This document shows, in pieces, positions 1-17,659 of a stretch of DNA of 64,000 bases. The DNA lies in the IMG/VR virus record IMGVR_UViG_3300025141_000016, positions 233,105-297,104 of that record; one strand, given 5' to 3'. Position numbers and translations under genes: made by a program. Below the pieces are notes generated by a model. That model had not been told where the DNA came from, did not search any database, and worked only from the letters and a program-made list of their open reading frames with translations. Each line of letters opens with the position of its first letter. The stretch's first letter is position 1.

Positions 1-2
1 TG

Positions 3-2144
3 ATTCCGGGGCGTTCTGACACATTACTGGAACTGATTGAGGGGGCGGGGTTCCAAGGACGCGCAGCACAGCGTTACGCCGACCGATTCCGTGAAACCCT
101 CGCTCAACAAAGCCGAGAGGTTGCCGCCAGCGCAAGTCGAGTCGCTGCCCGCTACCTCGTCGCAGACTGCAATCTGCGGCTTCCCTCTCATTCATGGATT
201 GACCCCAAGGGGAAGGTTCATTTGGTTCCCCTTATGCACGATGTCTGGGCCGAGGAAAAGATACGATCTACGCCCTCGATGCTGCGTTCGTTTGTGAAAC
301 GCTACAGGGAATACTATCCCGATGAACTCTATGAGATCGACCATCCGTGGACCAGTTTTCTGGTTGACCAAGGTTGGGTGAGGGTGGCGAACTTTCTGAA
401 CTTTGAGGGGAGAGATCACCTTGTTTCCCCGCACGCTTGGGAGTCAGCCGCAGACCTCATCATCAACTGTGTGGTCAAGAAGCAGCTTGACCCCGAGACT
501 ACTGTCGTGACGGTCGCTGGATATGGGAAGCAGCGATACTCGGTGTCCCAGATCGTCAGGGAATGGGGTGGGCGCAAGGCCGAGGATCGGTTGTTTGGGG
601 CACTCATGGCCCGCACCGCTGCCCGACTTTGGTATCACGGGACTGAAAAGCGTTTTGAAGAGTTCAAGACCTTTGAGAGCCACACGTTTGGGTCTGACCC
701 CTCCGAAGTGCCTCTGTTCTTCTCGCCCTCCAAGTCCTTTGCAAAGATGCACGCCCAAGGACCGAAGGGGGTCATCTACACGGCGCGGCTGAAGTGGCGC
801 AAGGTGTTTGATAGCGCCAACTTGTATCGGGAATCTCGGTACTGGCCCCCCGAACGTGACGCTCTGACCCAAGAGGGGAAGGCCCTGTACGACGACCTCG
901 TAGGGGGCAAGGTGTTTCCCGGCATTGATGAAGACGATCTGCTTGACGGGTATCCGAGTCTTTGGTCGCAGGTGCTCCGTATGGATTACGATGTGATTGA
1001 AACGACGGAGTTCAAGCGGTGGCTCAAAAAGAACGGTTACGACGCGGCTTATGTCACGGGAGATGGTGAGCAGAACGTGTTTGTCTTCTCCCCGAGACAG
1101 GTCGAGGTTGTGGGCGTGCAAAGGGCCTCCGCATCCGTTTCTGCTTCCCGTGTCGCTGCTCGCCATCCCGTCGTGGACATTGACCCCAGCAAAGTAAAGT
1201 TCAAGATCCGATCCAGTAGCGATGCTGTGGCTGTGGAAATGCGGTATGGCGGTAAGCGCATTGGCGGCATGAACGCCCACAAGGTCCGTTATCCAGAAGA
1301 GAAGGACTGCCCTCGGGACGTTACCGCGTTGGCTGAACGCTTCCCCGAGTTGGTGACGGGAGAATGGAAGCGCAGCGATGGTGAGGTGTGGCGATACATC
1401 ACCGCGCTGGCCGTCTTCAAAGCGTTCATCACCGAGGAGGAGTTTCGGGGGTATGGGCTCGGCAAGAAGATGTATAAGGCACTGATGGGGGCTTGGTTCA
1501 AGAAGGTCGGACCATTTCTTTTCATGCCCTATAAGTGTGACGGGGGTTCGGGCACGTCACCAGACGCGATGCGGGTTTGGCACTCTTTAGCCAAGGAGTT
1601 TCCATCAAGTGGCGACGTGGTTGCGGTGATGAAGAATCCGCGTGTGGCTCGGGGGCAGTTACCCCAGTACCGAAAGAGGGCACACACCCCCGACTCCAGC
1701 GAGGAGGTCGAGAACTGGGTGGATGACTTTGGGCGGGAAAACAACTACACGCCTGGAACCTGTGACCTCAACCGTGGCGACTGCGACATGATGTCAAACG
1801 TCTTCGCGGACTGGTTTGAGGACCAGACTGGCGTGGGGCTTCAGATATGGGCCGGTCAGGGGTTCATCCCTCCTCTCGGGAAGGATGCCAATGACCTCTG
1901 GGTCATGCTTTCGGGGGACAAAGCCCACAAGAAAGGCGAGAAACCCCTCTCCCATGTGGTCGTCGTCTGGGGGGATTGGGTCATTGACCTTACAGGTCGT
2001 CAGTTCGGTTCCAAGTACAAGGCCCCTGTGTACTCTCTTTCGGAGTTCAAGAAGCGGTGGGCCACCGTTGGGAAGGCCCGTCGGGCTGACCGAGGGATCA
2101 ACAACCTCCGACGGATGATGCTCCAGAACTCCAGCGATTGGTAG
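3..2144 (+). CDS. Tag-B polyprotein, 5'-truncated: unknown domain + ART-like + GNAT + transglutaminase/papain-like domain
   Basis: Frame of ORF 222..2144 is open back to the window start and includes ASASRVAARYL (129-158). ART-like: WYHGT..FFSPS..GYDA..VFSPRQV. GNAT: EFRGYGLGKKMY. C-H-D triad: GDCDMMS..SHVVV..IDLTGRQF. Confidence 0.75.
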   Translation: MPGRSDTLLELIEGAGFQGRAAQRYADRFRETLAQQSREVAASASRVAARYLVADCNLRLPSHSWIDPKGKVHLVPLMHDVWAEEKIRSTPSMLRSFVKRYREYYPDELYEIDHPWTSFLVDQGWVRVANFLNFEGRDHLVSPHAWESAADLIINCVVKKQLDPETTVVTVAGYGKQRYSVSQIVREWGGRKAEDRLFGALMARTAARLWYHGTEKRFEEFKTFESHTFGSDPSEVPLFFSPSKSFAKMHAQGPKGVIYTARLKWRKVFDSANLYRESRYWPPERDALTQEGKALYDDLVGGKVFPGIDEDDLLDGYPSLWSQVLRMDYDVIETTEFKRWLKKNGYDAAYVTGDGEQNVFVFSPRQVEVVGVQRASASVSASRVAARHPVVDIDPSKVKFKIRSSSDAVAVEMRYGGKRIGGMNAHKVRYPEEKDCPRDVTALAERFPELVTGEWKRSDGEVWRYITALAVFKAFITEEEFRGYGLGKKMYKALMGAWFKKVGPFLFMPYKCDGGSGTSPDAMRVWHSLAKEFPSSGDVVAVMKNPRVARGQLPQYRKRAHTPDSSEEVENWVDDFGRENNYTPGTCDLNRGDCDMMSNVFADWFEDQTGVGLQIWAGQGFIPPLGKDANDLWVMLSGDKAHKKGEKPLSHVVVVWGDWVIDLTGRQFGSKYKAPVYSLSEFKKRWATVGKARRADRGINNLRRMMLQNSSDW

Positions 2145-2366
2145 CTACCGTTTGAGGAAGGCGGCGGCGACACCCCATCCCTTCGACGTGAGCCGACGGG
2201 GCTCTTTCTTGGTGATCCAGCCCTTTGTCAGTGCATGGTGGTGGTAGGGGCAAGGCCCCGAAACCGGGATGGAACCCAGAGGGTTTTTCAAGCAGTGGTC
2301 GGCCCACTTGATCATCACCTTCCGAGTCATCTGGTTGATGAACGCCTCTTCGCCTTTCGATCTCAT
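2145..2366 (-). CDS. Small hypothetical protein
   Basis: ATG at 2366 preceded by AGGAG; stop abuts the stop of the convergent gene. Confidence 0.55.
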   Translation of the reverse strand: MRSKGEEAFINQMTRKVMIKWADHCLKNPLGSIPVSGPCPYHHHALTKGWITKKEPRRLTSKGWGVAAAFLKR

Positions 2367-2416: not shown

Positions 2417-2431
2417 CGGTACTCATGCTAT
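2417..2431 (+). promoter_or_regulatory. Class I (late-type) motif, variant
   Basis: CGGTAC-tcatg-CTAT, before ATG 2461. Confidence 0.6.
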
Positions 2432-2460: not shown

Positions 2461-3474
2461 ATGTCCGAACTTCACCTGTATGACTTCGACGGAACACTGT
2501 TCCGAAGTCCCCATGAGCCTGCGGTGTGGGATGGTCAGTGGTGGAACGACGTGCGCTCCCTGATCCCCCCGTGTGTCCCACAGAAGCCGGGGGCTGATTG
2601 GTGGGTCAACCAAACTGTCAGCAGTGCCAAGCAGTCGATCTCCGACCCAGACGTGTTTGCCATGATGATCACAGGGAGGAATGCAAACTCGGGTCTTCGG
2701 TTCCGGGTGCCAGAACTCCTCAAACAGCGAGGGCTCAACTTCGATGAGGTCCATCTGACCCCCGTTAGCAGCACCCTGGGGTACAAGAAGAAGCTGCTGG
2801 GGAATACGTTGGGGCGGTATCCCCTCATCGACACCGTGCGGATGTGGGACGACAGACCCTCACACCTCCGAGCCTTCGCGCAGGTTGCGGAGAAGATGGG
2901 GATTGACCCCGAAAACATCCATGCCACCCAGGTCCGGGCCAAGTCCAAAGACCCCGAGTGCGAAGAAGACAGCCCAGCAGGGGGTGGTTTCCTGTCAGAC
3001 CCCCCTCCAATCGGAGACGTGTGCCGATATGTAGGGGTTTTTCTTGATGCTTCTTCCAAGGCAGCCCTGTCACATGCGTTCCCTTTTGCCCACAACAAGA
3101 TCAAGAACGACCATGTGACCCTCTGCCTTGGCCCCGCTCTTGGGGGAAACATAGCGGAGGGTGCCCTCGATCTCCTGGGAACGAAGGTACGCATGAAGGT
3201 GATTGGCTACGCCGAGGATGAGGATGGGCAAGCAGTAGTGGTTTCTGTTCCCCCCGGACTCATCTCGGACGCTTCCAGAATCCCTCATGTCACCTTGTCC
3301 ATCTCGGACTCGGTGCAGTCCAAGTACAGCAACACTCTCCTCCGCAAAGGGTGGGAGCGTGTTCGCGGCCCCGCCATCAGTGGGGTGATTGATATGTTTC
3401 CGCGCTCCATGCGAAGGCAAGCAAGTGCAGTTCGGGTAGCCTTCCTGCATTCTCGCTTGGGCCGTAGCGGGTAG
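2461..3474 (+). CDS. HAD-family (Swiss-army-knife type) phosphatase fused to 2H phosphoesterase; RNA end-healing enzyme; C-terminal tag B
   Basis: YDFDGTLF..ITGR..WDDR (HAD) and two HVTL motifs (2H). Start moved to ATG 2461, 30 nt after a class I motif. Confidence 0.8.
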   Translation: MSELHLYDFDGTLFRSPHEPAVWDGQWWNDVRSLIPPCVPQKPGADWWVNQTVSSAKQSISDPDVFAMMITGRNANSGLRFRVPELLKQRGLNFDEVHLTPVSSTLGYKKKLLGNTLGRYPLIDTVRMWDDRPSHLRAFAQVAEKMGIDPENIHATQVRAKSKDPECEEDSPAGGGFLSDPPPIGDVCRYVGVFLDASSKAALSHAFPFAHNKIKNDHVTLCLGPALGGNIAEGALDLLGTKVRMKVIGYAEDEDGQAVVVSVPPGLISDASRIPHVTLSISDSVQSKYSNTLLRKGWERVRGPAISGVIDMFPRSMRRQASAVRVAFLHSRLGRSG

Positions 3475-3483
3475 CCTCTCTAT
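3469..3483 (+). promoter_or_regulatory. Class I motif
   Basis: GGGTAG-cctct-CTAT, before 3513. Confidence 0.7.
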
Positions 3484-3512: not shown

Positions 3513-4838
3513 ATGGCCCATGACGACGATGCAAAGAAAACCAGTGAGACTCCGTTTTCTCTGACGCAGAACCCCGCTCCGAACCCTGTGACGGGGTTGG
3601 CGTACAAGACCCAGAAACGGGATCTTGTAGAGAAGATCCTGGCGACGTTCCGGTCTGTGCTGCCGAGCAACTATGTCGCACAGGTCAATGGCCCCTGGTA
3701 CTCGTTGCAGTTTCAGGCGATGGCCGAGCAGTTGGCCGAGATCCAAATCTTGGGGACCGAGGTCTACAAAGACTCTGATTGGGACTTCACGCGCACAGAC
3801 TTCTTGTGGCAAGTGCTGGGGTCACTCGTTTTTCCAGGGGCGACTGACCGCTCGGGCATCCCGGCCATCGACGGGGACACCGCCTATCGGCAGTTCCTAC
3901 ATAAGATGGTGTTGTTTCTGTTGGACGGAGCCACCAAAGCCAGCCTGGAAAGAGGGTTAGAGGCCCTTGATCCCGATGTGGTGGCCACCATCACCGAGAG
4001 GTATCTGGAGTCCCCCCCTCGTGATGAAGATGGGGCCTTCACCATTGATGACCAGTTCGTCATCGACGTTTTCATCGAGGGGGCAGCACCCAACACCTTC
4101 CCTGCTGACCCCTTCGTTCTCCAGCAGAACGCGGAACTGGTGCTGGCAGCCTTGAAGCCAGCGCACGTCATCTATTCGTACTCCTACTTGTTCCGCGATG
4201 CCTTCGACAAGATCGCGGATGACAGTGGGGGCCTTTCCCTTGATCTCGACTCCTATTACTACGCCGACCTGCGGAAGTGGTGTCTGGGTGCCCAGCGCAT
4301 CACCGGATCCGGGGACACCCTCACCAACCGGATGCACTTTTCGGACCCCACCAAGTCCTTCCAGAACGTCCGGGCTGGGGCAATCCTCACCTTATCCGCT
4401 GGTGCTAACAAGGGTCGCTATCGGGTGGTGTCAAAGAGGGTTCTCCTGGGGGGCATCGACCCAACATCAGTGACCTACACCCTCTCCACGTCCCTTGTTC
4501 TCACAGGGACTCTGACCGCTCCTGGCGTGGATACGGTGACATTGAGCGCGGCCCCTGATTGGAGCCTCATCCCAGTGGACACCACCATCACCATTGGAAG
4601 TGGGATCAACGCTGGGACGTATCGCTTGGACACAGTGCTGGGGCCAACGGGAGGACCAGTGGGAACTGTTGGGATCAGTGGCGCACAGGTGCGCCTGTCC
4701 CCCAGCATCCTTCAGGTGGAACGCCGAATGTTGAGCACGTTGAATGCTCAAGCCTATGAGGTCGGTGTGGATCGACTCGGGGTACAACTCCCCCACGTTG
4801 TTGCTGGTGAGAACGTCTCCACCCAGTTCCTTTTGTGA
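3513..4838 (+). CDS. Probable baseplate wedge / tail-formation protein
   Basis: DTAYRQFL..GATKASLE..ALKPAHV pattern typical of baseplate protein I-like proteins; beta-rich C-terminus; class I promoter. Confidence 0.6.
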   Translation: MAHDDDAKKTSETPFSLTQNPAPNPVTGLAYKTQKRDLVEKILATFRSVLPSNYVAQVNGPWYSLQFQAMAEQLAEIQILGTEVYKDSDWDFTRTDFLWQVLGSLVFPGATDRSGIPAIDGDTAYRQFLHKMVLFLLDGATKASLERGLEALDPDVVATITERYLESPPRDEDGAFTIDDQFVIDVFIEGAAPNTFPADPFVLQQNAELVLAALKPAHVIYSYSYLFRDAFDKIADDSGGLSLDLDSYYYADLRKWCLGAQRITGSGDTLTNRMHFSDPTKSFQNVRAGAILTLSAGANKGRYRVVSKRVLLGGIDPTSVTYTLSTSLVLTGTLTAPGVDTVTLSAAPDWSLIPVDTTITIGSGINAGTYRLDTVLGPTGGPVGTVGISGAQVRLSPSILQVERRMLSTLNAQAYEVGVDRLGVQLPHVVAGENVSTQFLL

Positions 4839-4845
4839 GGCGGCG

Positions 4846-5667
4846 ATGACCCCTTCAAGCCAACGTGTAGCTTCCCGGTGGGCGAAGTCCCAAGCCAACT
4901 GGACGCTGCCCTATCTGGAAAAACTCATCAAGGCAGCCGAGGGTGACCCCACAGGGTGGGGGGAGAGTAGTCCTGCCGCCCGCGTCCTGCGGCAGATGAT
5001 CAAGTCCTCCGGGTTCGGGAACCTTGACCCGTTCCCAGTAGGTGAACTGTGGGACTACTTGACCTCATACGATGTGGACTCCGACGAGATCGCGGTGTTG
5101 AAGAAAGTTCGACCCCCCCGAGCACGGAAAAGGAAGGTAGGTCCGACATTCTACGAAGCACTACGCGCCTTTGAGCAGGCAACGGGGAAACACACGACCA
5201 CATCCCGCATTGACTGGGACAACGACCACCACTTGGCCCCGGCATTGTTGGCGATCACCAAAGCCGTCTCCAAGTTGCCCAAGCGGGCTGCCCGCCTCTG
5301 GCAGTCGGAAGTCAAGGAGGTGATGCTGGTCGGGCGCAACAAGAGCACCGAGGATGCCTCTTGGCGGGCCGGTGGCGTGATGCGTTTAGTGCTCGGAAAG
5401 AGTGGTTTCCACTCTGTGTCCCAAAGCGTTCCCCCCTGGCGCTCCCACATTGTCCATGAACTCGGGCACGCACTGGAGGACAAGTTGAATCTGGTGGTGA
5501 CCGCTTGGTCCTCGGACCCCTACGGCCATGAACCATACATTTCGGCATACGCGGACACGAACGCCTCGGAGGACTTTGCCGAGACGTTTCAGGCTTTGGA
5601 GATGGAGCCGAGCCGCCTACGACGAGTAGCCCCTGCCAAGTATGAGGACATGAAGGCTCGCTTTTGA
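4846..5667 (+). CDS. Tag-B protein with zincin metallopeptidase domain
   Basis: HELGH followed by SAYADTNASEDFAE; N-terminal SSQRVASRW; start moved to ATG 4846. Confidence 0.75.
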   Translation: MTPSSQRVASRWAKSQANWTLPYLEKLIKAAEGDPTGWGESSPAARVLRQMIKSSGFGNLDPFPVGELWDYLTSYDVDSDEIAVLKKVRPPRARKRKVGPTFYEALRAFEQATGKHTTTSRIDWDNDHHLAPALLAITKAVSKLPKRAARLWQSEVKEVMLVGRNKSTEDASWRAGGVMRLVLGKSGFHSVSQSVPPWRSHIVHELGHALEDKLNLVVTAWSSDPYGHEPYISAYADTNASEDFAETFQALEMEPSRLRRVAPAKYEDMKARF

Positions 5668-5673
5668 GGGGTG

Positions 5674-5688
5674 CGGTAAGTCCTCTAT
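5674..5688 (+). promoter_or_regulatory. Class I motif
   Basis: CGGTAA-gtcct-CTAT, before 5720. Confidence 0.75.
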
Positions 5689-5719: not shown

Positions 5720-6097
5720 ATGTCTGACCAACCCAGTACCCGGCGAGTGGCCCGTGCGTTCCAAGCGGCACGAAACACCCGCCGCCTCAAAGAAGCCCTG
5801 GAGGCATACCTCCACTCCATCCAAATCGAATCCGAGCAGATGATGGATGACCCCAAGTGGGGGAAGGGGGGCAAGTATGACCCCGTAGCGGATGCCGGTG
5901 TTTGGATCGGGGACCGGGCCAAGGACGAAGCGGGGGCCGATGTGGTGCTCCACTTTGATGGGGCTGGGTATGACTATTTCTACTACGGGTCACGCATGGC
6001 TGAACCTCACCGCAAGGCGGTGAGGGCCATCGCCAAGAAGCTGGGCTACGAGATGGAAGACAACACCAACTGGAACATCGGCTTCTACCCGAGATAA
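5720..6097 (+). CDS. Tag-B hypothetical protein
   Basis: N-terminal STRRVARAF; RBS and class I motif upstream. Confidence 0.7.
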   Translation: MSDQPSTRRVARAFQAARNTRRLKEALEAYLHSIQIESEQMMDDPKWGKGGKYDPVADAGVWIGDRAKDEAGADVVLHFDGAGYDYFYYGSRMAEPHRKAVRAIAKKLGYEMEDNTNWNIGFYPR

Positions 6098-6600: not shown

Positions 6601-8631
6601 TTAGGGGGTGCTGGCGTGGGCATCGAAGTCAATCTCGCAGGAACCCCCCATGCAAGCAAGGGTCTGTGCGCCCTGGCCCATGTCCTCTGTCTCGTAGCGG
6701 GAGAGGAGTCCGTAATCGACGGTGGGAAAGTCCTCACTCAACCGTAGGTATTCTTCCTCGGTGATCTTCGTGTAGGGGGCGAGTTCGTAGTTGCCCCCAT
6801 CGTAGGGGAGAAACGAGAGGCCGGTCACTTCATCGAAGTGCGTGTAGAGCCAGTTCCCTACCTCGTCCCACTCATGGTCACGAACGTAGACGGTGGCACT
6901 CTGGTTGTGGCCGCGCCGAGAGCACCACGTCTGCATGATGTGAAGGTAGCGTCCAAGCTGTTCCAAAGCAGTCTCATCGTCGCGGGTCATGCACCCCTTG
7001 GGGGCCTTCACGGGGAACTCGACCACCCATGTAGGACATTCATCATCAGGTCCGTCCTTGTATTTCACGTCCTTGTGGACAGGAGCACCCGAGTCGCGAA
7101 TGAGGTGGAAGAGAGGATCGGTGGCACTGACCCGCACGCGACGGATGTAGAACGGTGACCACCGTGTGTGGAACCCGCTCGCACAATCCACAGCCTGTGA
7201 ACTGTTGCCACTCGGCTTCCCACAGGCCACCGAAGCGGGCATCGGAATGTTGAGGTGAGCCGAGGCTGCGGCAGCAGTTTCCAGGGCCACGCGGTTGAAG
7301 TAGGTCATGGCCTTGGGGTCATTGGACAGGGTGGGGTTGTCACAGTGCCCGGTAATGTCCACTCCCAGGAGCCGGTCCTCATCACAGTGCTTCTTCCAAG
7401 CCGGACGGAGGTACGGGAAGTGGGTGAAGGACGCTTGAATCGCGCCGATCCAAGTAGCCACCTTGACCTTTTCAGCGAAGGAATGAACAGTGTCGTCGGC
7501 TCGCATGACAGCAGCCGAGAGATTGCAGAACTGGCCTCCACCCCCTTCGCCGGTCCAGGGGTCTTCCGCTACCGCGTAGCGGAGTAGGATCTCCCCACAC
7601 GGGTTGGAGCGCATGTCTCCACGGCGTTCTCGACGCTTGGCGCTCGGGATCATGTAAAACCCACGCTCACCGCTGCCGCTGTTCCGTAGGGCGGCCCACT
7701 CTGCATCGAAGGTCTGACGGTCAGGCTTATCGCTCCAGAATGCAGACAGGTTCGCCATGTATCGGTGCTCGGGAAACTTGCCTCGGCTCCAGTCTTTCGC
7801 GTGGCGCATCTCCTCGTCGTCAGGGTCAGAGAAGCAGATGAGAGCAGCACGACGCACACCCCCTGCCTTGACGATCTCTCCGATCATGCAGCAAATGTCG
7901 CTGACCTCCAACGAGGTCAGGTGTCGGCCCGAGGCCCCGTCGATGACCTCCTGGCAGAACTCCAAGAGAAGACGTAGAGGTTTTGGCCCGGAAGCCCTGC
8001 CCCCTTTCGTCATGCACCGTGAACCTTCAAGTCGGATCAGGGAGTAGTCGAACTCGACCGTATAGCCCTTCCACATGGAGGTGAGTCCGTGGAACACCGC
8101 GTCGGCCCAACCCTCCGTTGAGTCTGGGATCAGGTACGAGACTGTCTTCCCGTTACGGGGGGCAACCAACGGTAGATTGCTGACGAACTTCCGTTCGACG
8201 GAGTAGCCAACGCCAGTGCCCATCATCAAGATGTAGAGCATCTCCGCGAAGGCCCGCAGGTTGTCCATCGGCAGGAAGGAGCAGTTGTAGATCATCGTGT
8301 TGTCGCGCTCTGCCGCAGGACCAGCCGACCACAATGCCCGCATCGACGGCAGCGTCCCCATCTCCAGCATCCCCTCACGCACTGACTTCAACACCGCTGA
8401 TGGAATGTCCCGATTCCGGTCGATGAAATCCACATATCGGTCCACCGCTTCGGGGTAGACCTCACGCCGAGAGTCCTCTTCCCGCCATCGCAGGTAGGAG
8501 CGTGTGATCACGAACTGGGAGAGGGGGTTGGCGAAGGAGAAGGTAGGTTTGAGGTCCGCATGGAAAACCGTCCCCGGAAGCGTCTGTAGGCCATCTGTAT
8601 TGTGTGCGGCGGGGGGGCGTGGTTGGTCCAT
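6601..8631 (-). CDS. nrdJ: Class II (adenosylcobalamin-dependent) ribonucleotide reductase
   Basis: PSMR..YNC, GGVRRAA, NPCGEI, FCNL, KPSG motifs; C-terminal CxxxxC pair. Confidence 0.92.
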   Translation of the reverse strand: MDQPRPPAAHNTDGLQTLPGTVFHADLKPTFSFANPLSQFVITRSYLRWREEDSRREVYPEAVDRYVDFIDRNRDIPSAVLKSVREGMLEMGTLPSMRALWSAGPAAERDNTMIYNCSFLPMDNLRAFAEMLYILMMGTGVGYSVERKFVSNLPLVAPRNGKTVSYLIPDSTEGWADAVFHGLTSMWKGYTVEFDYSLIRLEGSRCMTKGGRASGPKPLRLLLEFCQEVIDGASGRHLTSLEVSDICCMIGEIVKAGGVRRAALICFSDPDDEEMRHAKDWSRGKFPEHRYMANLSAFWSDKPDRQTFDAEWAALRNSGSGERGFYMIPSAKRRERRGDMRSNPCGEILLRYAVAEDPWTGEGGGGQFCNLSAAVMRADDTVHSFAEKVKVATWIGAIQASFTHFPYLRPAWKKHCDEDRLLGVDITGHCDNPTLSNDPKAMTYFNRVALETAAAASAHLNIPMPASVACGKPSGNSSQAVDCASGFHTRWSPFYIRRVRVSATDPLFHLIRDSGAPVHKDVKYKDGPDDECPTWVVEFPVKAPKGCMTRDDETALEQLGRYLHIMQTWCSRRGHNQSATVYVRDHEWDEVGNWLYTHFDEVTGLSFLPYDGGNYELAPYTKITEEEYLRLSEDFPTVDYGLLSRYETEDMGQGAQTLACMGGSCEIDFDAHASTP

Positions 8632-11071: not shown

Positions 11072-11719
11072 GGTGAACCTCCTTTACAGGAGGGGACGAT
11101 AGACGATCTACGGAACGAAGGCGCAGTTGGACCCGGACAGCGAGTCCGTGATCGGAAAAGCGGAGTGGGATGGATAGGTGTAGGTGTATGGGTGGTGTTG
11201 CTACTACTACGGGAAGGAGTCTTTTGATGAAGGATCGGAGGATCATTATTGAGTGTCTGATTTATTTTGAATCGGTCAACCTAACGGTTTCCCTCTCCTA
11301 AACAGAGTCTATTGAGTCTGTCGTCCCCCTCCTGCGCCAGTGAGGGGGTAGAGGATGCCGAAGGTGAAGGATCCGATTTCCGAGCAGCACGCCTTTTGAC
11401 TCCCTCTCTCCTTTCCCGAGGTGAGAGGGGTGGTGTCAAAAGGGCCGAGCGAAGACTGATCCCGAGAACCCGTCCCCTTTACAGGGGGGTGGGTCAACCC
11501 TTGAAGTTCCGAATGGGAAAGAGCGAGCAAGCGGGGGTGTTCCTTACCCCTCGGGTTTCCCCGATCAAACAACCCAAAGATTCAGTCAAGCACCGATCTG
11601 GCGACCGGCCTAAATGTCCCGTGAGTTTCTGACACCCCCTCCGAAGAGGGGGACTTACCGGGTAGGGTCTACTCGGATCGGGGGGTCTTCGCAACCCCCC
11701 TTCTCCGGGGAGGGGCGCT

Positions 11720-12031
11720 GTGTACCGATTATGGATTGTGGACCGGGATCTGAAACCGACCGTGCTGAGTGCGGCTTACCTGACCGTCCATGAGGCGATG
11801 GGGTCGGCAGCGCGTTTGATGAAGGGGTTTGGTGCCCCGGCGTTGGATGCCAGGAACATTCTGATGTGGGCAGGGAAGCCCAGCCTTGTGGTCTTTGACC
11901 CCACCTTTTCGGTCGTTGTGTCGGCGGTCATCGAGGGAGGTCAACTGGTGTCGAGTGGTGACGATCCTGTCCCCCTTGATCCTGACGACAACGTGGGTCC
12001 ATGCCAGACGACCCCTTCAATCTCCGAGTAG
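11720..12031 (+). CDS. Hypothetical protein
   Basis: GTG start with GGAGG RBS. Confidence 0.5.
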   Translation: MYRLWIVDRDLKPTVLSAAYLTVHEAMGSAARLMKGFGAPALDARNILMWAGKPSLVVFDPTFSVVVSAVIEGGQLVSSGDDPVPLDPDDNVGPCQTTPSISE

Positions 12032-12046
12032 CGGTAGGAGCCCTAT
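12032..12046 (+). promoter_or_regulatory. Class I motif
   Basis: CGGTAG-gagcc-CTAT, before 12075. Confidence 0.75.
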
Positions 12047-12074
12047 AGGTTCCGAGGGGTCAGGAGCCCTCATC

Positions 12075-13097
12075 GTGAATCACCCGGACCCCAAACGAGT
12101 TGCTATCGCTGTGTCTCCGCAGCATCAGGCGGCTCGGGTAGCGGCTCGCTACGCCTCCTCCCCTCTGATAAAGGAGTTGGAGGAAGACTACCATTCCCTC
12201 TGGCATGACAAGCATGAAAGGGAGGACGGAAAGCCTCGGCTGTGCCCACTGAAAGCTGGGGTGCCCGATTGTGAGAAGATGACCCTCAAAGAGTTCGTTG
12301 CCAAGTGGAAGAGGCACGGGCTGAAGGCGGTAAAGGTCCAACGGCTTCCTACCACCTACTCCTACTATGACTGTGGGAGCCACGCCACGCTGCGGACGGA
12401 ACAGATCCATGGCAGCCGACTTTACCCCCAAGGCGACATCACGGTTGACTTGAACACCCCCATTCCTTGGAGCAAGGCGAAGAAAGGCGACTGGGTTCAA
12501 TGGCCATGGCACCACGGAGTGGTGATTGATCCCAAGCGCAAGATTGTGGAGAGTTGTTGGGGGGTAGACGGATGGGTGTTTCAACACCCCGTAGACCTTT
12601 CTACTTATGGGGCGAAGCCTACGGTTCATTCCGTGCATCCAAAAGAGAAGACCAAGACCGCCAGTTCTGATGGTCAGTGTATCGTCGGAGGCCAGTGCTT
12701 CCGCTACGCTGTCATGTGGGATGGCAAAGGCCCAGGATCATCCCCTGACGACATTGTTGTTCACGGGAACGTGCATGGCTTGGTCGGTCCTCACGCCTGG
12801 GTCGAGCGGAAGGACGGTCGCGTATTTGACTGGCAGACGGTTGAGGGGATCTGGGAGACGCTTGGCCGTCAACCTGACCCCAGCTACACCAAGCGCGGCT
12901 GGCCGAAGCGTGAGTTCTACGCGGAGTTCAAGCCGCGCAAGATGAAGCGGTACACCGCCGAAGACGCGCTGATCAACGGGATACGGAACCGGCACTACGG
13001 TCCCTGGGACGCGGATGAGGAGTACCGTCCTCCAATCCGATCAGCATCGCGGGTTGCCGCTCGCTACTTGATGGCTTCTCGGCGGCAACGCCGGTAG
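12075..13097 (+). CDS. Tag-B polyprotein: NlpC/P60-papain-like domain + transglutaminase-like domain
   Basis: YDC..HHGVV..ESCWG..HP..YG domain; KTAS linker; QCFRYA..HAWVE..FDWQ domain; tag B at both ends. Start GTG 12075 after AGGAG. Confidence 0.7.
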   Translation: MNHPDPKRVAIAVSPQHQAARVAARYASSPLIKELEEDYHSLWHDKHEREDGKPRLCPLKAGVPDCEKMTLKEFVAKWKRHGLKAVKVQRLPTTYSYYDCGSHATLRTEQIHGSRLYPQGDITVDLNTPIPWSKAKKGDWVQWPWHHGVVIDPKRKIVESCWGVDGWVFQHPVDLSTYGAKPTVHSVHPKEKTKTASSDGQCIVGGQCFRYAVMWDGKGPGSSPDDIVVHGNVHGLVGPHAWVERKDGRVFDWQTVEGIWETLGRQPDPSYTKRGWPKREFYAEFKPRKMKRYTAEDALINGIRNRHYGPWDADEEYRPPIRSASRVAARYLMASRRQRR

Positions 13098-13106
13098 CTT
13101 CTTTAT
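13092..13106 (+). promoter_or_regulatory. Class I motif, variant
   Basis: CGGTAG-cttct-TTAT, before 13140. Confidence 0.65.
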
Positions 13107-13139
13107 CTCTCCGATAAGGTCAAGTACCGGAGACAACCC

Positions 13140-13589
13140 ATGTCCAAGACCCTTACTGGATCTGACCGTAAACGCCTCATCCGCCTTGCTTCTACCCTCC
13201 CCACGGGGTCAGATGAGCGGAAGGCTATCCTTGCTGGGCTTCACCATGTCGCCGTCCACAAGACCGCCTCCAAGAAGACCACCCTCTCGGCAGATTTGAA
13301 GTTGAAGGACGGGACCGTGTACGCGAAGGGATCGCGTGCAGAGGTGTTCTTCTCGGAGCGCAACCCCTCCATGTCCGAGGTGGAGATTGAGGGTAGGAAG
13401 ATCAAACTCCGCACGGTCAGTCTCCACAAGTACCTCCGTGGTTTTCCAAAGCCCCCCTCCACGAGAGCCTTGCAGAAGATGGACAGTGAGGCTTCCGGGC
13501 CAACGGTCAGTGGGGTACGCAACGTCGAGATGGACGGCTATGGTCCCGATGGGTCACCCTCGTGGATGCTGGCCATGGGGCTCATCTGA
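13140..13589 (+). CDS. Tag-A protein, unknown cargo domain
   Basis: N-terminal LIRLASTLPTGSDERKAILAGL, then KTAS. Confidence 0.75.
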   Translation: MSKTLTGSDRKRLIRLASTLPTGSDERKAILAGLHHVAVHKTASKKTTLSADLKLKDGTVYAKGSRAEVFFSERNPSMSEVEIEGRKIKLRTVSLHKYLRGFPKPPSTRALQKMDSEASGPTVSGVRNVEMDGYGPDGSPSWMLAMGLI

Positions 13590-13621
13590 CCCTGTGCGCC
13601 TCGGTGGTCGCTCCGTGAAGG

Positions 13622-13636
13622 GGGTCAACCACCTAC
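13622..13636 (+). promoter_or_regulatory. Class I motif, degenerate
   Basis: GGGTCA-accac-CTAC, before 13670. Confidence 0.35.
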
Positions 13637-13669
13637 CGAATGTCCGTAGAGGGCACAACGGAGAATGGT

Positions 13670-14125
13670 ATGAGCGCATCCCCCCAGAAAGTAGCCGAGC
13701 GGTGGGCCTCCGAAGCCAAGTTCTTCCGTGGCCTCCACAGTCGCAACAAGGGCATCTTCTTTCGTGGGGCCAAGAACCCCGGTGCCGGTGGCGGGGCTGG
13801 CTTTGGTGCTCTGGGACGTGGCCTTTATCTCGCGTGGGACAAGGGGATCGCCCAGTTCTTTGCTGACCGAGCCGGGGGTCAGGTATACGCCTACAAGATT
13901 CCGTCCAGCCTCAAACTGCTCGATGCCCAGAGCAGCGAGATGGCGACGATCAAGGAAGGGATGGGATTCAAGCCCTGGCAGTATTCAGACGATCCCATGT
14001 ACGCCGCTGTCGTCACAGCCGAGGTAAAAGACCTTGGATACGACGGGGTGATCTCCGACAAAGCGGCAGATGGCCTTGTCTTGTTCGATCCCCGTAAAGC
14101 GAAGCTGGTGGACCTACCGGAGTGA
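13670..14125 (+). CDS. Tag-B protein with ADP-ribosyltransferase-like domain
   Basis: FFRG..LGRGLYLA..AQFFA..GYDGVI..VLFDP; N-terminal SPQKVAERW. Confidence 0.65.
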   Translation: MSASPQKVAERWASEAKFFRGLHSRNKGIFFRGAKNPGAGGGAGFGALGRGLYLAWDKGIAQFFADRAGGQVYAYKIPSSLKLLDAQSSEMATIKEGMGFKPWQYSDDPMYAAVVTAEVKDLGYDGVISDKAADGLVLFDPRKAKLVDLPE

Positions 14126-15280
14126 TGCAGCGACGGCGTAGGACTCGCCGGGAGCCTCGTCCAGAAGCCCCTGCTCACAGAGGTATGCGATTGCGCGGCG
14201 GGTGTCGGCAGCGTCGAGCCGGAGGTCTGACTGGATTTCCTCGCGGGTTGACCATGGCTCATCGGCCACGAGCCGCAGGATGCGTTCGGCGTTTCCAACG
14301 GTGACTGGACCGTCACGAAGAGACTTGCGAACTCGTCCGGCAAGGTGGGCTGCTCGGAGGGTGGAGACACCTTCGCTGGCAGCGATCTCATCGCGGGTAG
14401 CCCCAGCGATCAAAGCGTCGTAGACCCGCTGATAACGCTCGGCGGCTCCTCGGTGGGCAGCACGGACGAGAGCACGACCGCCTGTGGTCTGGATTGTGTC
14501 TTCGTCGGTGAGGATGAGCATATCTTCCGGGCTCGGGCTCCGAGAGATGATCACCTCATGGAGATCATCCTCGTCTCCCTCGTAGGCGACTTCCCACTCG
14601 GTCCCCTGGTTGGCCCGCTGGCAAACGTACTCGGGGGATTCTGTCTCGACGCGAACTCGGATCTCGTGCTGGGTCCGTGCCCCACGCATCCGAGCGAGGG
14701 GTTCTGCGCCTCGGACGAAGACGCTGGAGAAGTGCTTGCGCTTCAGAAACTTGTAGAGCGTGGAGAGCGATACGGTGCCTTTCTCGGCCAGTGCCTTGTC
14801 GAAGGTGCCACCTGCGGCCCATTTGGCGATCCAGAGCCCCGTCAACGAGAGACATTCGGCGTAGTCTTCGGAGGGGTAGTCGCGGGAGAGCAGCGCGGCG
14901 AGTCGGCGGTCCAGGGCGCGGTCGCGCAGTTGGGCTTCCAGCCATTCTGATGAGGTCAGCGGTGCGGCTTCATCGACCAGGGAGGAGAGGTGGGTCGTCA
15001 CCGTCTCGTGGTCGTCTGACCGGAGGTGGGAGAGCAGCCCAGCCGCGTCACCCTGGAGAGCAGACCAGAGGTCAGCGCAGAGGAGGGCTTGTGAGCCGGT
15101 GCCCCGGTAGCCGTTCTGGTTCACGGAGTCGCGTCGAACGATACTCCGTTTGCGGGCCGTGGCTTTGGCGAGGTCGGTGATCCCGGCTGCGACCAGCGAT
15201 TCAACTTCGCTGGGAGTCTGGGGGGAAGCACCGTGGATGAGATCGAGCAGGGAGAGCAGGTATGAGAGTCGTCGGGTCAT
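14114..15280 (-). CDS. Sigma-like / HTH transcription factor with C-terminal winged helix
   Basis: SPEDML..GATRDEIAASEGVS..RVRKSLR (region 4-like), then RILRLV..TREEI..LCEQGLL (wHTH). Confidence 0.55.
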   Translation of the reverse strand: MTRRLSYLLSLLDLIHGASPQTPSEVESLVAAGITDLAKATARKRSIVRRDSVNQNGYRGTGSQALLCADLWSALQGDAAGLLSHLRSDDHETVTTHLSSLVDEAAPLTSSEWLEAQLRDRALDRRLAALLSRDYPSEDYAECLSLTGLWIAKWAAGGTFDKALAEKGTVSLSTLYKFLKRKHFSSVFVRGAEPLARMRGARTQHEIRVRVETESPEYVCQRANQGTEWEVAYEGDEDDLHEVIISRSPSPEDMLILTDEDTIQTTGGRALVRAAHRGAAERYQRVYDALIAGATRDEIAASEGVSTLRAAHLAGRVRKSLRDGPVTVGNAERILRLVADEPWSTREEIQSDLRLDAADTRRAIAYLCEQGLLDEAPGESYAVAASLR

Positions 15281-15521
15281 GGGATTCCTTGGAGTTCCGA
15301 TGCCAGCAAGCTGGACAGGATGGGTGAGTGGTTTTTGGTCGAGGACGGGGACGGTGCTCTTACCGAGCGGGTCAAGGTCTGCGACTTCTCAACATCCTAT
15401 CCGCCGTGACCCTATGGGTCAACCCCACCTTGGCCATCAAGTGGATCGAAGTGGGCCAGATGCGGCCCCGTGCCCCATGCTTATTTTTTGGCGGGGGGAT
15501 CACCCCTGATCAGGGTGGTGT

Positions 15522-15536
15522 CGGTAGGTCGTCTAT
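15522..15536 (+). promoter_or_regulatory. Class I motif
   Basis: CGGTAG-gtcgt-CTAT, before 15581. Confidence 0.75.
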
Positions 15537-15580
15537 CTGGGTAGTGGGGGTAGAAGAGAAGTCCCTTTGGAGAGATCCCC

Positions 15581-17017: not shown

Positions 17018-17057
17018 CCTTCCCGTGGGTAGGGTGGGGGAGCCAGGAGCCCTGTGT

Positions 17058-17438
17058 ATGCCCACCTACGAATACCGCTGCGATGCCTGTGAGGAGCACT
17101 TTGAAAAGCTGCTCCCGATAGCACGCTACCGAGAACCCCAAGATTGTCCGGCGTGTGGGCACACCCCCGCTACGAAGTTGGTTTCGGGAGGATCAGGATT
17201 TATCCTGCGGGGTGATGGATGGGCTGGGAAGAACAACCGGGTCCGGGGTCAGATGAGAGCGAAGAATCGTCGTCTGGATGCGGCCCAAGCTGAACGAGGC
17301 CAAGACGCGGGGGGCAAGCTGGCCCCGAATGTTGAGGGCGAGAGGGTGGGGTCATGGAGCGAGGCAACCAAACTGGCGAGGTCCAAGGGCAAGGACACCT
17401 CTGGCTACGAGGCGCGGGCGCGGAAGGAAAAGAAGTGA
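17058..17438 (+). CDS. FmdB-family zinc-ribbon protein
   Basis: MPTYEYRCDAC..CPACG..FILRGDGW. Confidence 0.85.
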   Translation: MPTYEYRCDACEEHFEKLLPIARYREPQDCPACGHTPATKLVSGGSGFILRGDGWAGKNNRVRGQMRAKNRRLDAAQAERGQDAGGKLAPNVEGERVGSWSEATKLARSKGKDTSGYEARARKEKK

Positions 17439-17650
17439 AACGCCTGCCTCCTCCCGATGAGGAGCAGCCGCTCTCCGCGCAGTTCGCAGGCAACTTTCAG
17501 AGGGCGTTCACGTTTACCTTCGTGCTGACCGTTACGACGCTCGCTGTGCTCGGGGTCGTTTTCGTCCGGGCGGCACGGCGATTGCGTCTCCAGAAAGAGC
17601 GAGGGAAGAACATCATCGACGTAGAGGTAGTGGAAGTGGACCCTCAATAG
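17435..17650 (+). CDS. Small single-pass membrane protein
   Basis: GTGA overlap with the upstream stop; hydrophobic segment followed by basic residues. Confidence 0.55.
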   Translation: MKRLPPPDEEQPLSAQFAGNFQRAFTFTFVLTVTTLAVLGVVFVRAARRLRLQKERGKNIIDVEVVEVDPQ

Positions 17651-17659
17651 GTCGCCTAT
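17645..17659 (+). promoter_or_regulatory. Class I motif, variant
   Basis: CAATAG-gtcgc-CTAT, before 17687. Confidence 0.6.

What the first reader, a model, noticed from the sequence alone, without database searches (positions are those of the whole stretch)
2461..3474. Tagged HAD + 2H RNA end-healing fusion
A 3'-phosphatase-type HAD fused to a 2H cyclic phosphodiesterase is the healing half of RNA repair used against anticodon nucleases (T4 Pnkp/Rnl1 is the precedent). Here it has a late motif and a C-terminal RQASAVRVAF tag, which suggests a pre-packaged counter-defence. The 2H domain could instead degrade cyclic oligonucleotide signals, as Acb1-type 2H enzymes do. No RNA ligase or kinase is seen in the window.
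Basis: partly seen in the sequence, partly recalled or inferred. Interest (0 to 1): 0.65.

Follow-up and report, generated by a model that had tools for sequence, protein, structure and literature searches.

The report
Phage RNA-end healing enzyme, tagged
A huge marine phage encodes one protein that joins a cyclic-phosphate-opening domain to a phosphate-removing domain, most likely to clean damaged RNA (tRNA) 3' ends, and it ends in a short peptide motif that about two dozen other proteins of the same phage also carry.

Summary
Window 2461-3474 (+) is a real 337-aa gene. Residues 1-162 form a HAD phosphatase of Pfam family HAD_SAK_1, and the fold is closest to the T4 Pnkp 3'-phosphatase (Z 14.4). 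Residues 182-316 form a 2H phosphoesterase closest to CNPase and the tRNA-ligase CPD domain (Z 13.9). All catalytic motifs are present and conserved in about 90 metagenomic homologues.

The C-terminal "tag" is also real. It is a diverged copy of the peptide [PA]-S-x-S-R-V-A-x-R-[YF]. This peptide occurs 28 times in the 297-kb phage record, against 2.5 expected. It lies at protein termini or domain junctions, including those of ART-PolyVal polyvalent proteins.

The "late motif" is a variant of an abundant promoter-like element, GGTAN-N5-CTAT. That element also precedes a helicase gene, so late timing is not shown.

No RNA ligase was found in the record, which is 67% complete. In related huge phages the HAD+2H pair is fused to CCA-adding/poly(A)-type nucleotidyltransferases, to a kinase, or to topoisomerase IB.

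My best reading is two-step 3'-end healing of RNA (cyclic phosphate to monophosphate to OH) that supplies a nucleotidyltransferase or a ligase. Packaging into the virion is plausible but untested. The gene is a new variant of a known kind and of moderate interest.

The parts
2418..2431 (+). Promoter-like motif GGTACTCATGCTAT, a variant of GGTAG-N5-CTAT, 29 nt upstream of the start codon
   Evidence: The pattern GGTAN-N5-CTAT occurs 41 times in the record against about 5 expected. 32 of 41 copies lie in the 5.9% of sequence that is intergenic, usually 25-46 nt before a same-strand start. The same motif precedes the endolysin and sheath-domain genes, but also a UvrD helicase gene.
2461..3474 (+). 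Coding sequence of the HAD-2H protein (P0001, 337 aa, stop included)
   Evidence: About 90 full-length homologues at 34-79% identity. An identical copy lies on a second IMG/VR contig (L028).
2461..2946 (+). HAD phosphatase domain (residues 1-162), family HAD_SAK_1. Motif I is D8-F-D10-G-T12 (2482-2496), motif II T71, motif III K109, motif IV D130-D131. A conserved Trp/Pro/Cys-rich insert after motif I spans residues 17-48.
   Evidence: Pfam E 6e-22. Invariant columns in the alignment. Fold match to T4 Pnkp phosphatase 5uj0 (Z 14.4) and Pnkp1 4xrp (Z 13.9).
2947..3003 (+). Disordered acidic/Gly-Pro linker (residues 163-181)
   Evidence: pLDDT is below 50 for residues 171-181. This region varies in length in the alignment.
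3004..3408 (+). 2H phosphoesterase domain (residues 182-316), CNPase/tRNA-ligase-CPD type. HxT motifs are H218-V-T220 (3112-3120) and H276-V-T278 (3286-3294).
   Evidence: CNPase match Z 13.9, rmsd 2.2, 132 residues. PF08302 scores 17-18.7 bits, below the cut-off of 23. phrog_36523, E 4e-7. The nearest ESM Atlas clusters are PF08302-type. Motif conservation.
3415..3444 (+). C-terminal tag RQASAVRVAF (residues 319-328), a diverged copy of the recurrent peptide [PA]-S-x-S-R-V-A-x-R-[YF]. The model shows it as a low-confidence helix (323-335).
   Evidence: 24 genes carry it. (19 of 37 homologues). (relatives L009, L010). (it lies at domain junctions in related multidomain proteins). (helix, pLDDT 54-63).

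Best explanation
P0001 is a two-step healing enzyme for RNA 3' ends. Metal-independent ribonucleases, the usual chemistry of anticodon nucleases, HEPN effectors and many toxins, leave a 2',3'-cyclic phosphate.

Step 1 (inferred from homology): the C-terminal 2H domain, of the CNPase / tRNA-ligase CPD type, opens the cyclic phosphate to a 2'-phosphomonoester. That is the product of the CNPase and Trl1-CPD clade.

Step 2 (inferred from homology): the N-terminal HAD domain, of the DxDxT acyl-phosphatase type with the T4 Pnkp phosphatase fold, removes the monophosphate and leaves a 2',3'-diol.

Step 3 (inferred from domain fusions in relatives): the clean 3'-OH end is used by a class-II CCA-adding/poly(A)-polymerase-type nucleotidyltransferase. 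The phage encodes a tagged one at G000 11563-14280. This would rebuild a damaged tRNA 3' end without any ligase. Alternatively, a ligase could use the end after 5' phosphorylation. The phage has a 161-aa Pnk-like P-loop kinase at G000 about 96 kb, and no RNA ligase was found.

Shown here: gene, domains, catalytic residues, folds, the fusion partners in relatives, and the recurrence of the tag.

Inferred: substrates, product chemistry, the partner enzymes, the counter-defence role, and any role of the tag in delivering the enzyme into the virion.
For: Family and residues: HAD_SAK_1 E 6e-22. All four HAD motifs and both HxT motifs are conserved.

Folds: T4 Pnkp phosphatase Z 14.4, Pnkp1 of the Pnkp1/Rnl/Hen1 RNA repair complex Z 13.9, CNPase Z 13.9. 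The best viral match is a Pandoravirus 'Swiss Army Knife RNA repair protein HAD domain' protein, E 1e-13.

Domain fusions in relatives:
- L041 carries 2H + class-II nucleotidyltransferase + HAD in one 1550-aa protein.
- L091/L092 carry nucleotidyltransferase + HAD + a different (LigT-type) 2H in one 919-aa protein.
- L071 carries HAD + AAA_33 kinase.
- ESM Atlas clusters fuse this 2H type to PolyA_pol, to AAA_33 or to HAD_SAK_1, mostly in tailed phages, and fungal SAK proteins also combine the two domains.
- The HAD/2H pair occurs in both orders: HAD-2H here, 2H-HAD in L035.

Own genome: a tagged 905-aa class-II nucleotidyltransferase lies next to the second HAD_SAK_1 gene, and there is a Pnk-like kinase.

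Literature: jumbo phages are described as using 2H enzymes to clear cyclic ends and SAK-family HADs as the linear phosphatases (PMC7824862). The E. coli CCA-adding enzyme carries its own cyclic phosphodiesterase/phosphatase domain (Yakunin 2004, listed as reference 37 in PMC2190708; the content is from my own knowledge).
Against: - No biochemical data exist for this protein. As far as I know none exist for any HAD_SAK_1 member either.
- No Rnl1, Rnl2 or RtcB ligase and no Tpt1 were found in the record, although the record is only 67% complete.
- The record has no tRNA genes.
- No repair gene is a conserved neighbour in 51 groups of related loci.
- The nucleotidyltransferase cannot be told apart from a poly(A) polymerase, because all NCBIfam scores are below the equivalog cut-offs.
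- Iyer et al. 2017 argue that phage 2H domains never linked to ligases may be RNases or degraders of signalling nucleotides (PMC5512222).
- The most frequent fusion partner of this HAD is topoisomerase IB, which points to DNA or DNA/RNA ends.
- PF08302 does not reach its curated cut-off.
Confidence: 0.55

Rival explanations
1. Signal eraser. The 2H domain cleaves immune second messengers (cyclic di-, tri- or oligo-nucleotides, or 2'-5' oligoadenylate), as Acb1 and viral 2'-5' phosphodiesterases do. The HAD domain dephosphorylates the linear products so they cannot be reused or sensed.
For: Acb1 is a 2H-type enzyme and appears among the viral fold matches (rank 31, E 3.6e-4, TM 0.49 by target). 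Iyer et al. 2017 propose this role for phage 2H domains that lack ligase partners. No ligase was found here.
Against: - The nearest 2H relatives by fold and by language-model features are CNPase/tRNA-ligase CPD types, not Acb1.
- The fused partners are polynucleotide-end enzymes: a Pnkp-type phosphatase, CCA/PAP nucleotidyltransferases and a Pnk-like kinase.
- No Acb1 family hit appeared in Pfam even at E 10.
Confidence: 0.15
2. End cleaning at DNA or mixed DNA/RNA breaks, working with the phage topoisomerase IB. Type IB enzymes form 3'-phospho intermediates and, at embedded ribonucleotides, leave 2',3'-cyclic phosphate nicks. The 2H and HAD domains would clear those blocked 3' ends for repair or replication.
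For: HAD_SAK_1 is fused to Topoisom_I in the same genome (1255 aa) and in L037, L045, L047 and L055. L035 carries TopoIB + 2H + HAD in one chain. T4 Pnkp phosphatase also acts on DNA 3'-phosphates (established knowledge; structures with ssDNA appear).
Against: P0001 itself has no topoisomerase domain, and its gene lies about 220 kb from the topoisomerase gene. The fusions to CCA/PAP nucleotidyltransferases and the CPD-type 2H argue for RNA. That topoisomerase IB makes cyclic phosphate ends at ribonucleotides is recalled from the literature and was not tested here.
Confidence: 0.12
3. Nucleotide salvage. The enzyme converts 2',3'-cyclic NMPs and 2'/3'-NMPs released by RNA breakdown into nucleosides for the phage nucleotide pool. 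It would have no role in repair or defence.
For: CNPase-type 2H enzymes and many HAD enzymes act on mononucleotides (CNPase structures with 2',3'-cAMP and 2'-AMP appear). A ribonucleotide reductase gene lies 3 kb away (6601-8631).
Against: The HAD fold is closest to polynucleotide 3'-phosphatases. The fusions to nucleotidyltransferase, kinase and topoisomerase and the shared tag with polyvalent-type proteins do not fit simple metabolism.
Confidence: 0.08

Closest known systems
Bacteriophage T4 polynucleotide kinase-phosphatase (Pnkp), phosphatase domain
   Same: A DxDxT HAD acyl-phosphatase fold (Z 14.4, rmsd 2.6, 133 residues), encoded by a phage, with a presumed role in healing RNA 3' ends after nuclease attack.
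   Different: P0001 has no kinase domain. The cyclic phosphate would be opened by a separate 2H domain rather than by the HAD itself. Sequence identity is only 13-14%. No Rnl1 partner was found. P0001 has a Trp/Pro/Cys-rich insert after motif I.
Fungal/plant tRNA ligase (Trl1) CPD domain and vertebrate CNPase (2H phosphoesterases)
   Same: Two HxT motifs, the same fold (Z 13.9), a weak PF08302 match, and nearest clusters of the PF08302 type.
   Different: The domain is much more compact: about 135 residues against about 210, with 58 residues between the motif histidines. It is fused to a phosphatase that would remove the 2'-phosphate, which Trl1 keeps as a mark for ligation. It is not joined to a ligase or kinase.
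'Swiss Army Knife' (SAK) RNA repair proteins, Pfam HAD_SAK_1 (Burroughs & Aravind 2016)
   Same: The Pfam family assignment is well above cut-off. Fungal SAK proteins of about 526 aa also combine HAD_SAK_1 with a structurally matching 2H domain. The best viral fold hit is a Pandoravirus SAK HAD protein.
   Different: This is a short two-domain phage version with a terminal tag. The jumbo-phage survey describes the SAK HAD as mostly standalone in phages (PMC7824862). The 2016 paper could not be read here.
E. coli multifunctional CCA-adding enzyme (nucleotidyltransferase + HD domain with cyclic phosphodiesterase, 2'-nucleotidase and phosphatase activities)
   Same: The same logic: open the cyclic phosphate, remove the phosphate, then rebuild the tRNA 3' end. 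Relatives of P0001 put 2H, HAD and a class-II nucleotidyltransferase in one chain.
   Different: The healing chemistry comes from unrelated folds (2H + HAD instead of HD). In this genome the nucleotidyltransferase is a separate gene about 220 kb away. The E. coli activities are from my own knowledge of Yakunin 2004 (reference seen).
Acb1 anti-CBASS phosphodiesterase
   Same: A phage 2H-type enzyme, with a weak fold match.
   Different: It is not the nearest 2H clade. Acb1 is a single domain with no phosphatase, and there is no sequence-family match.
Polyvalent proteins of phages and conjugative elements (Iyer et al. 2017) and the T4 capsid targeting sequence
   Same: Several effector-type enzyme domains appear in one chain. 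The gene sits next to an ART-PolyVal protein. A short terminal peptide is shared with such proteins, which recalls the T4 internal-protein targeting peptide (literature).
   Different: P0001 has only two domains and no MuF, portal or MPTase module. The ART-PolyVal neighbour is not conserved in the closest relative. The motif sequence is unrelated to the T4 signal, and its function is untested.

Membership tests
HAD superfamily phosphatase (DxDxT type) | Motif I DxDx(T/V) with the nucleophile Asp and the Asp+2 acid/base residue | tested here: met
   D8-F-D10-G-T12. D8, D10 and T12 are invariant in 37 homologues.
HAD superfamily phosphatase (DxDxT type) | Motif II (T/S), motif III (K/R) and motif IV (acidic pair) | tested here: met
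   T71 37/37, K109 37/37, D130 32/37 (E in the rest), D131 37/37.
HAD superfamily phosphatase (DxDxT type) | Rossmann-like HAD fold | tested here: met
   AF2 domain pLDDT is mostly above 90. T4 Pnkp phosphatase Z 14.4, Pnkp1 Z 13.9, Lem4 HAD Z 11.6.
Pfam PF10307 HAD_SAK_1 | Score above the curated gathering cut-off | tested here: met
   78.8 bits against 25.6, residues 22-158.
2H phosphoesterase superfamily | Two H-x-T/S-x motifs | tested here: met
   H218-V-T220-L and H276-V-T278-L, conserved in 33/37, 32/37, 37/37 and 32/37 homologues. One subclade (P0083-P0088) has lost the first His.
2H phosphoesterase superfamily | 2H fold with the two motifs on paired lobes | tested here: met
   CNPase catalytic domain Z 13.9, rmsd 2.2, 132 of about 135 residues. 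P. horikoshii LigT-like 1vdx appears in Foldseek. The juxtaposition of the two His residues in the model was not measured.
Pfam PF08302 tRNA_lig_CPD | Score above the curated cut-off of 23 bits | tested here: not met
   17.0 bits for the whole protein and 18.7 for the domain alone, matching only the second HxT region. Some homologues do carry a precomputed PF08302 hit, and the nearest Atlas clusters are PF08302-type. P0001 is therefore a distant relative, not a scored member.
T4 Pnkp-type bifunctional kinase-phosphatase | P-loop 5'-kinase domain in the same chain | tested here: not met
   No kinase family hit in P0001. A separate 161-aa AAA_33 kinase lies at G000 about 96 kb.
T4-type RNA repair pathway (Pnkp + Rnl1/Rnl2 or RtcB) | An RNA ligase encoded by the same genome | tested here: not met
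   The PF09414 hit is an NAD-dependent DNA ligase. No RtcB. No PF09511 hit, but the control genomes were silent too. The record is 67% complete.
Acb1 anti-CBASS family | Sequence or close fold membership | tested here: inconclusive
   No Pfam hit at E up to 10. The fold match is only at rank 31, TM 0.23/0.49. All 2H enzymes share the core fold.
Polyvalent proteins (Iyer et al. 2017) | Multiple effector domains in one chain, linked to virion or transfer genes or to MuF/portal/MPTase modules | tested here: inconclusive
   P0001 has two catalytic domains only. The upstream gene is an ART-PolyVal protein, but it is absent at that position in L009. Relatives embed HAD+2H in proteins of 919-1550 aa.
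Virion-packaged (ejected) proteins | Presence in purified virions | not testable with these tools
   This is an uncultured marine phage. Only DNA runs hold it.
RNA 2',3'-cyclic phosphodiesterase / 3'-phosphatase activity | Enzymatic conversion of RNA>p to RNA-OH | not testable with these tools
   This needs biochemistry.

The most novel reading that the evidence does not exclude
The peptide [PA]-S-x-S-R-V-A-x-R-[YF] is a targeting and/or processing signal. It would mark a cargo of about two dozen enzymes for loading into the capsid and delivery with the DNA. The cargo would include ADP-ribosyltransferases, a NUDIX protein, a zincin, HAD-topoisomerase IB, a CCA/poly(A)-type nucleotidyltransferase and this HAD-2H protein. 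The phage would then inject a ready-made, ligase-independent tRNA 3'-end repair kit (2H + HAD + nucleotidyltransferase) that acts before any phage gene is expressed.
Probability: 0.2. Interest if true: 0.8.

Novelty: new variant of a known kind. Interest (0 to 1): 0.45.

Why it matters
RNA-cleaving defences and toxins are widespread, yet the only well-understood phage counter-measure is the T4 Pnkp/Rnl1 pathway. This family pairs a cyclic phosphodiesterase with a Pnkp-like phosphatase and, in relatives, with a CCA/poly(A)-type nucleotidyltransferase. That points to a second repair route that needs no ligase. It also offers the first easily testable member of the uncharacterised HAD_SAK_1 family.

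The shared peptide motif at termini and domain junctions could separately give a sequence-based way to list the cargo or processed proteins of uncultured huge phages.

Tried and rejected
- A sequence search of PDB with the whole protein found nothing, even at E 10. Only fold comparison worked.
- The genome-wide search with PF08302 did not see even the gene itself. I used a profile built from the homologues' 2H domains instead, and it found a single copy.
- The PF09414 'RNA ligase' hit turned out to be an NAD-dependent DNA ligase.
- The PF09511 search was silent in all control genomes, so it says little.
- The sigma-70 promoter scan found nothing upstream. One terminator-like hairpin at 2190-2204 is within chance.
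- The most enriched intergenic words of the whole record (GAGTTGAACCCCCC and CGAGGAACCTGCTCCCGAGGAA) are not near this gene and are not enriched in the window.
- Neighbour clustering over 51 groups of HAD_SAK_1 loci gave EF-hand, adenylosuccinate-synthetase-like, chaperonin and unknown families. No repair gene appeared.
- The phage database gave matches only to the HAD half, in unannotated huge phages.
- Burroughs & Aravind 2016 could not be opened. What I say about SAK proteins rests on the Pfam name, and memory.
- Sequencing-run search: only marine DNA runs hold the stretch, and no RNA run does. I therefore did not lay reads and have no evidence on expression timing.
- A possible different N-terminal tag (L-K-x-A-G-L...) in the homologues that lack the C-terminal tag gave only one suggestive match and was dropped.
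- No complex prediction was run, because I do not claim a specific binding pair.
- No alternative genetic code was used.
Full report
**Setting.** The window is the last 64 kb (G000:C1:233105-297104) of a 297,104-bp linear IMG/VR virus record that CheckV rates 67% complete. It carries a tail-sheath-domain gene and an endolysin, a class II ribonucleotide reductase and a UvrD-like helicase. Its few matches in the phage database are to unannotated huge phages of 485-642 kb. Marine metagenomes hold the stretch, and an identical copy of the gene lies on a second IMG/VR contig (L028). The host is unknown.

**The gene.** The ORF runs from ATG 2461 to TAG 3472-3474 and encodes 337 aa (P0001). A longer reading from ATG 2269 exists but is unlikely for two reasons.
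- All 36 aligned homologues begin at the position of M1.
- A small divergent gene on the minus strand occupies 2145-2366. It is 83% identical to a 75-aa gene at the same position in the closest relative.

**N-terminal domain (residues 1-162).**
- Pfam places it in HAD_SAK_1 (PF10307) with E 6e-22 and 78.8 bits, against a cut-off of 25.6.
- PHROGs gives phrog_415, 'polynucleotide kinase'.
- The four HAD motifs are D8-x-D10-G-T12, T71-G-R73, K109 and D130-D131. They are invariant or nearly so in 37 sequences that go down to 33% identity.
- An insert rich in Trp, Pro and Cys follows motif I. P17, P20, W27, S33, P37, V39, P40, P43, W47 and W48 are invariant.
- In the AF2 model (mean pLDDT 87.7) this domain aligns best with the T4 Pnkp 3'-phosphatase (5uj0, Z 14.4, rmsd 2.6, 133 residues). 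The next best is Pnkp1 of the Pnkp1/Rnl/Hen1 RNA repair complex (4xrp, Z 13.9).

**C-terminal domain (residues 182-316).**
- It has two H-x-T motifs, H218-V-T220 and H276-V-T278, conserved in 33, 32, 37 and 32 of 37 homologues.
- It aligns with the mouse CNPase catalytic domain at Z 13.9, rmsd 2.2, over 132 residues.
- Pfam's tRNA-ligase CPD model matches only weakly, at 17-18.7 bits against a cut-off of 23. PHROGs matches phrog_36523, of unknown function.
- The ESM Atlas places the domain among PF08302-type 2H clusters that are mostly from tailed phages.
- A profile built from this domain finds only one copy in the record.
- One subclade of homologues (P0083-P0088) has lost the first histidine and both threonines. 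The 2H activity is therefore not kept everywhere.

**What the domain partners say.** Gene neighbourhoods were not informative.
- The closest relative keeps the helicase, the 443-aa downstream gene and the reductase, but not the upstream polyvalent protein.
- More distant loci share nothing recognisable.
- Clustering of neighbours over 51 groups of HAD_SAK_1 loci gave no repair genes.

Domain fusions were informative.
- L041 (1550 aa): CPD-type 2H, then a class-II CCA-adding/poly(A)-polymerase-type nucleotidyltransferase, then HAD_SAK_1.
- L091/L092 (919 aa): the nucleotidyltransferase with its RNA-binding domain, then HAD_SAK_1, then a LigT-type 2H. This is a different 2H family in the same role.
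- L035: topoisomerase IB, then 2H, then HAD, so the pair is in reverse order.
- L071 and P0076: HAD joined to an AAA_33 Pnk-type kinase.
- ESM Atlas clusters join this 2H type to PolyA_pol, to AAA_33 or to HAD_SAK_1. The last cluster has 78 members and is 96% viral. Fungal SAK proteins combine the two domains as well.
- In the present genome the second HAD_SAK_1 copy is fused to topoisomerase IB (1255 aa, G000 14816-18583). It lies directly after a 905-aa nucleotidyltransferase of the same class.

Repeated, independent joining of a cyclic phosphodiesterase, a Pnkp-like phosphatase and a 3'-end nucleotidyltransferase is best explained by a shared substrate: a blocked RNA 3' end.

**Mechanism proposed.**
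1. The 2H domain opens the 2',3'-cyclic phosphate left by metal-independent RNases. In the CNPase/Trl1-CPD clade the product is a 2'-phosphate (established knowledge).
2. The HAD domain removes the monophosphate. T4 Pnkp's phosphatase handles 2'- and 3'-phosphates (my recollection of Shuman-lab work; not checked here).
3. The resulting 2',3'-diol can be extended by the nucleotidyltransferase or sealed by a ligase after 5' phosphorylation.

The jumbo-phage survey by Iyer et al. describes this division of labour: 2H for cyclic ends and HAD of the PKN or 'Swiss-army-knife' families for linear phosphates. It notes that the SAK family tends to be standalone in phages (PMC7824862). The E. coli CCA-adding enzyme carries an HD domain with cyclic phosphodiesterase, 2'-nucleotidase and phosphatase activities (Yakunin 2004, cited in PMC2190708). 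That is a precedent for healing coupled to CCA repair without a ligase. All substrate and product statements for P0001 are inferences.

**The missing ligase.** These results weaken a T4-style heal-and-seal reading and favour the nucleotidyltransferase route, but the record is incomplete and a host ligase could serve.
- The only PF09414 hit is an NAD-dependent DNA ligase with OB, HhH and BRCT domains.
- RtcB and Tpt1 are absent.
- The Rnl1 model found nothing, though it also found nothing in the control genomes.
- A 161-aa AAA_33 kinase exists about 140 kb away.
- The record has no tRNA genes.

**The tag.** RQASAVRVAF (residues 319-328) lies after the last element of the 2H domain, in a low-confidence helix.
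- It is a diverged copy of [PA]-S-[AP]-S-R-V-A-[AS]-R-[YF].
- A pattern for this peptide matches 28 times in long open frames of the record, against 2.5 on average (maximum 11) in 200 residue shuffles. 26 of the 28 matches are on the plus strand.
- Synonymous codons vary freely, so selection is on the peptide and not on a DNA repeat.
- With a slightly looser pattern, 24 of about 276 genes carry it. It lies at the extreme N-terminus (residues 5-9 in six proteins), at the extreme C-terminus (five proteins), or inside large proteins (up to four copies in a 1519-aa protein).

Tagged proteins with a recognisable domain are:
- two ART-PolyVal ADP-ribosyltransferases, one of them the 1247-aa gene just upstream of P0001;
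- the 905-aa nucleotidyltransferase;
- HAD-topoisomerase IB;
- a weak NUDIX match;
- a protein with an HExxH zincin signature (seen in the translation; no Pfam hit);
- P0001 itself.

The helicase, DNA ligase, reductase, sheath-domain and endolysin genes are not tagged.

19 of 37 homologues of P0001 have the tag, and the others stop right after the 2H domain. The motif recurs in relatives. In multidomain proteins of other huge phages it falls exactly between domains:
- HAD | tag | topoisomerase in L055 and L037;
- 2H | tag | nucleotidyltransferase in L041;
- tag | HAD in L091.

A motif that is kept at the free end of single-module proteins and at each junction of multi-module proteins looks like a per-module docking or processing signal. 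Precedents are the T4 capsid targeting sequence and the protease-processed ejection proteins of giant phages (papers listed), and the predicted packaging of polyvalent proteins (PMC5512222).

**The upstream motif.** GGTACTCATGCTAT (2418-2431) lies 29 nt before the ATG.
- The pattern GGTAN-N5-CTAT occurs 41 times against about 5 expected from composition.
- 32 of the 41 copies fall in the 5.9% of the record that is intergenic, typically 25-46 nt before a start.
- It precedes the endolysin and the sheath-domain gene. It also precedes the UvrD helicase and the HAD-topoisomerase gene.
- The copy before P0001 is atypical (C at position 5). It is further degraded in L009 (GATAC...TTAT) and is GGTAG...ATAT in L010.

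It is a promoter-like element of this phage. Calling it 'late' is not justified by the data. No RNA data exist.

**Rivals.**
- Signal degradation of the Acb1 type is possible for any 2H enzyme and is favoured in the literature for ligase-less phage 2H domains. Against it, Acb1 is a distant fold match and the fusion partners are polynucleotide-end enzymes.
- A role at DNA or mixed ends with topoisomerase IB is suggested by the frequent HAD-topoisomerase fusion.
- Mononucleotide salvage is the least supported.

**Verdict.** The protein is a compact phage version of the SAK-type HAD + 2H healing module, with a terminal peptide shared by a set of effector-like proteins. It is a new variant of a known kind. 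The enzyme itself is of moderate interest. The recurrent junction/terminal motif and the implied ligase-independent repair kit are the parts most worth an experiment.

No reads were laid and no alternative genetic code was used.

Noticed in passing
Whole record G000. In the window: about 129-155 and 1140-1166 (1247-aa ORF ending at 2144), 3424-3450 (P0001), 4855-4881, 5735-5761, 13041-13067, 58892-58918: The peptide motif [PA]-S-[AP]-S-R-V-A-[AS]-R-[YF] recurs in 24 genes. A stricter pattern gives 28 matches against 2.5 expected. It lies at extreme N-termini, extreme C-termini or domain junctions. Codons vary at synonymous sites. It is conserved in related huge phages and sits between domains of their multidomain proteins. 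Its function is unknown: a targeting, docking or protease site.
   Followed up: partly
Window 2418-2431, 3470-3483, 5675-5688, 15523-15536, 33307-33320, 33768-33781, 43388-43401, 44673-44686, 46625-46638, 46996-47009, 52665-52678, 56938-56951, and elsewhere in G000: A promoter-like element GGTAG-N5-CTAT occurs 41 times against about 5 expected, 32 of them intergenic, 25-46 nt before starts. It is often followed by a second GTAGAGG/GGTAGG box. In two cases the GGTAG includes the TAG stop codon of the preceding gene (P0001 at 3472-3474; the 1255-aa gene at G000 18581-18583). It may mark the promoters of a phage-specific transcription system.
   Followed up: partly
G000:C1:14816-18583 (L004:5817-9584), and L035, L037, L045, L047, L055: HAD_SAK_1 phosphatase is repeatedly fused to a eukaryotic/poxvirus-type topoisomerase IB catalytic core in huge phages, usually with the tag between the two domains. 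One version (L035) also carries the 2H domain. The purpose of coupling a 3'-phosphatase to a type IB topoisomerase is unexplained.
   Followed up: partly
L041:89-4741 and L091/L092:8429-11188 (IMG/VR contigs): Single polypeptides combine a 2H phosphoesterase (CPD-type in one, LigT-type in the other), a class-II CCA-adding/poly(A)-polymerase-type nucleotidyltransferase and HAD_SAK_1. These are candidate all-in-one tRNA 3'-end repair proteins.
   Followed up: partly
Window 1-2144 (gene starts at G000 231505; L003:9506-13249): A 1247-aa polyvalent-type protein with an ART-PolyVal ADP-ribosyltransferase domain (residues 745-901) and two internal tags. It is absent from the same position in the closest relative L009, where a 172-aa gene stands instead.
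   Followed up: partly
Window 2145-2366 (-): A small conserved gene of about 73 aa, transcribed divergently from P0001 and 83% identical to its counterpart in L009. Its sequence is rich in His, Cys and Lys (…SGPCPYHHHALTKGWITKKEPRRL…). No function was assigned.
   Followed up: no
Window 4744-5667 (+), probable true start near 4849: A protein with an HELGH zincin-type metallopeptidase signature and the tag at its very N-terminus (MTPSSQRVASRW). It has no Pfam hit. It is conserved next to the 441/443-aa gene in L009. A candidate processing protease for the tagged proteins, untested.
   Followed up: no
Window 47117-52606 (+): An unusually long (1829-aa) protein whose C-terminal 350 residues match a tail sheath family (phrog_2839).
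   Followed up: no
Homologues P0055, P0079, P0082-P0088 (alignment A1, columns 1-46); L031:6866-7471: HAD-2H homologues that lack the C-terminal tag carry a conserved N-terminal extension (…L-K-x-A-G-L-x-x-E-A…). One neighbouring protein in L031 has a similar N-terminal stretch. This may be a different tag used by another phage clade.
   Followed up: partly
L071:8548-9672 and relatives (IMG/VR): An adenylosuccinate-synthetase-like gene lies just upstream of HAD_SAK_1-kinase genes in several phage contigs. It may be a PurZ-type enzyme of modified-base synthesis. Not examined.
   Followed up: no
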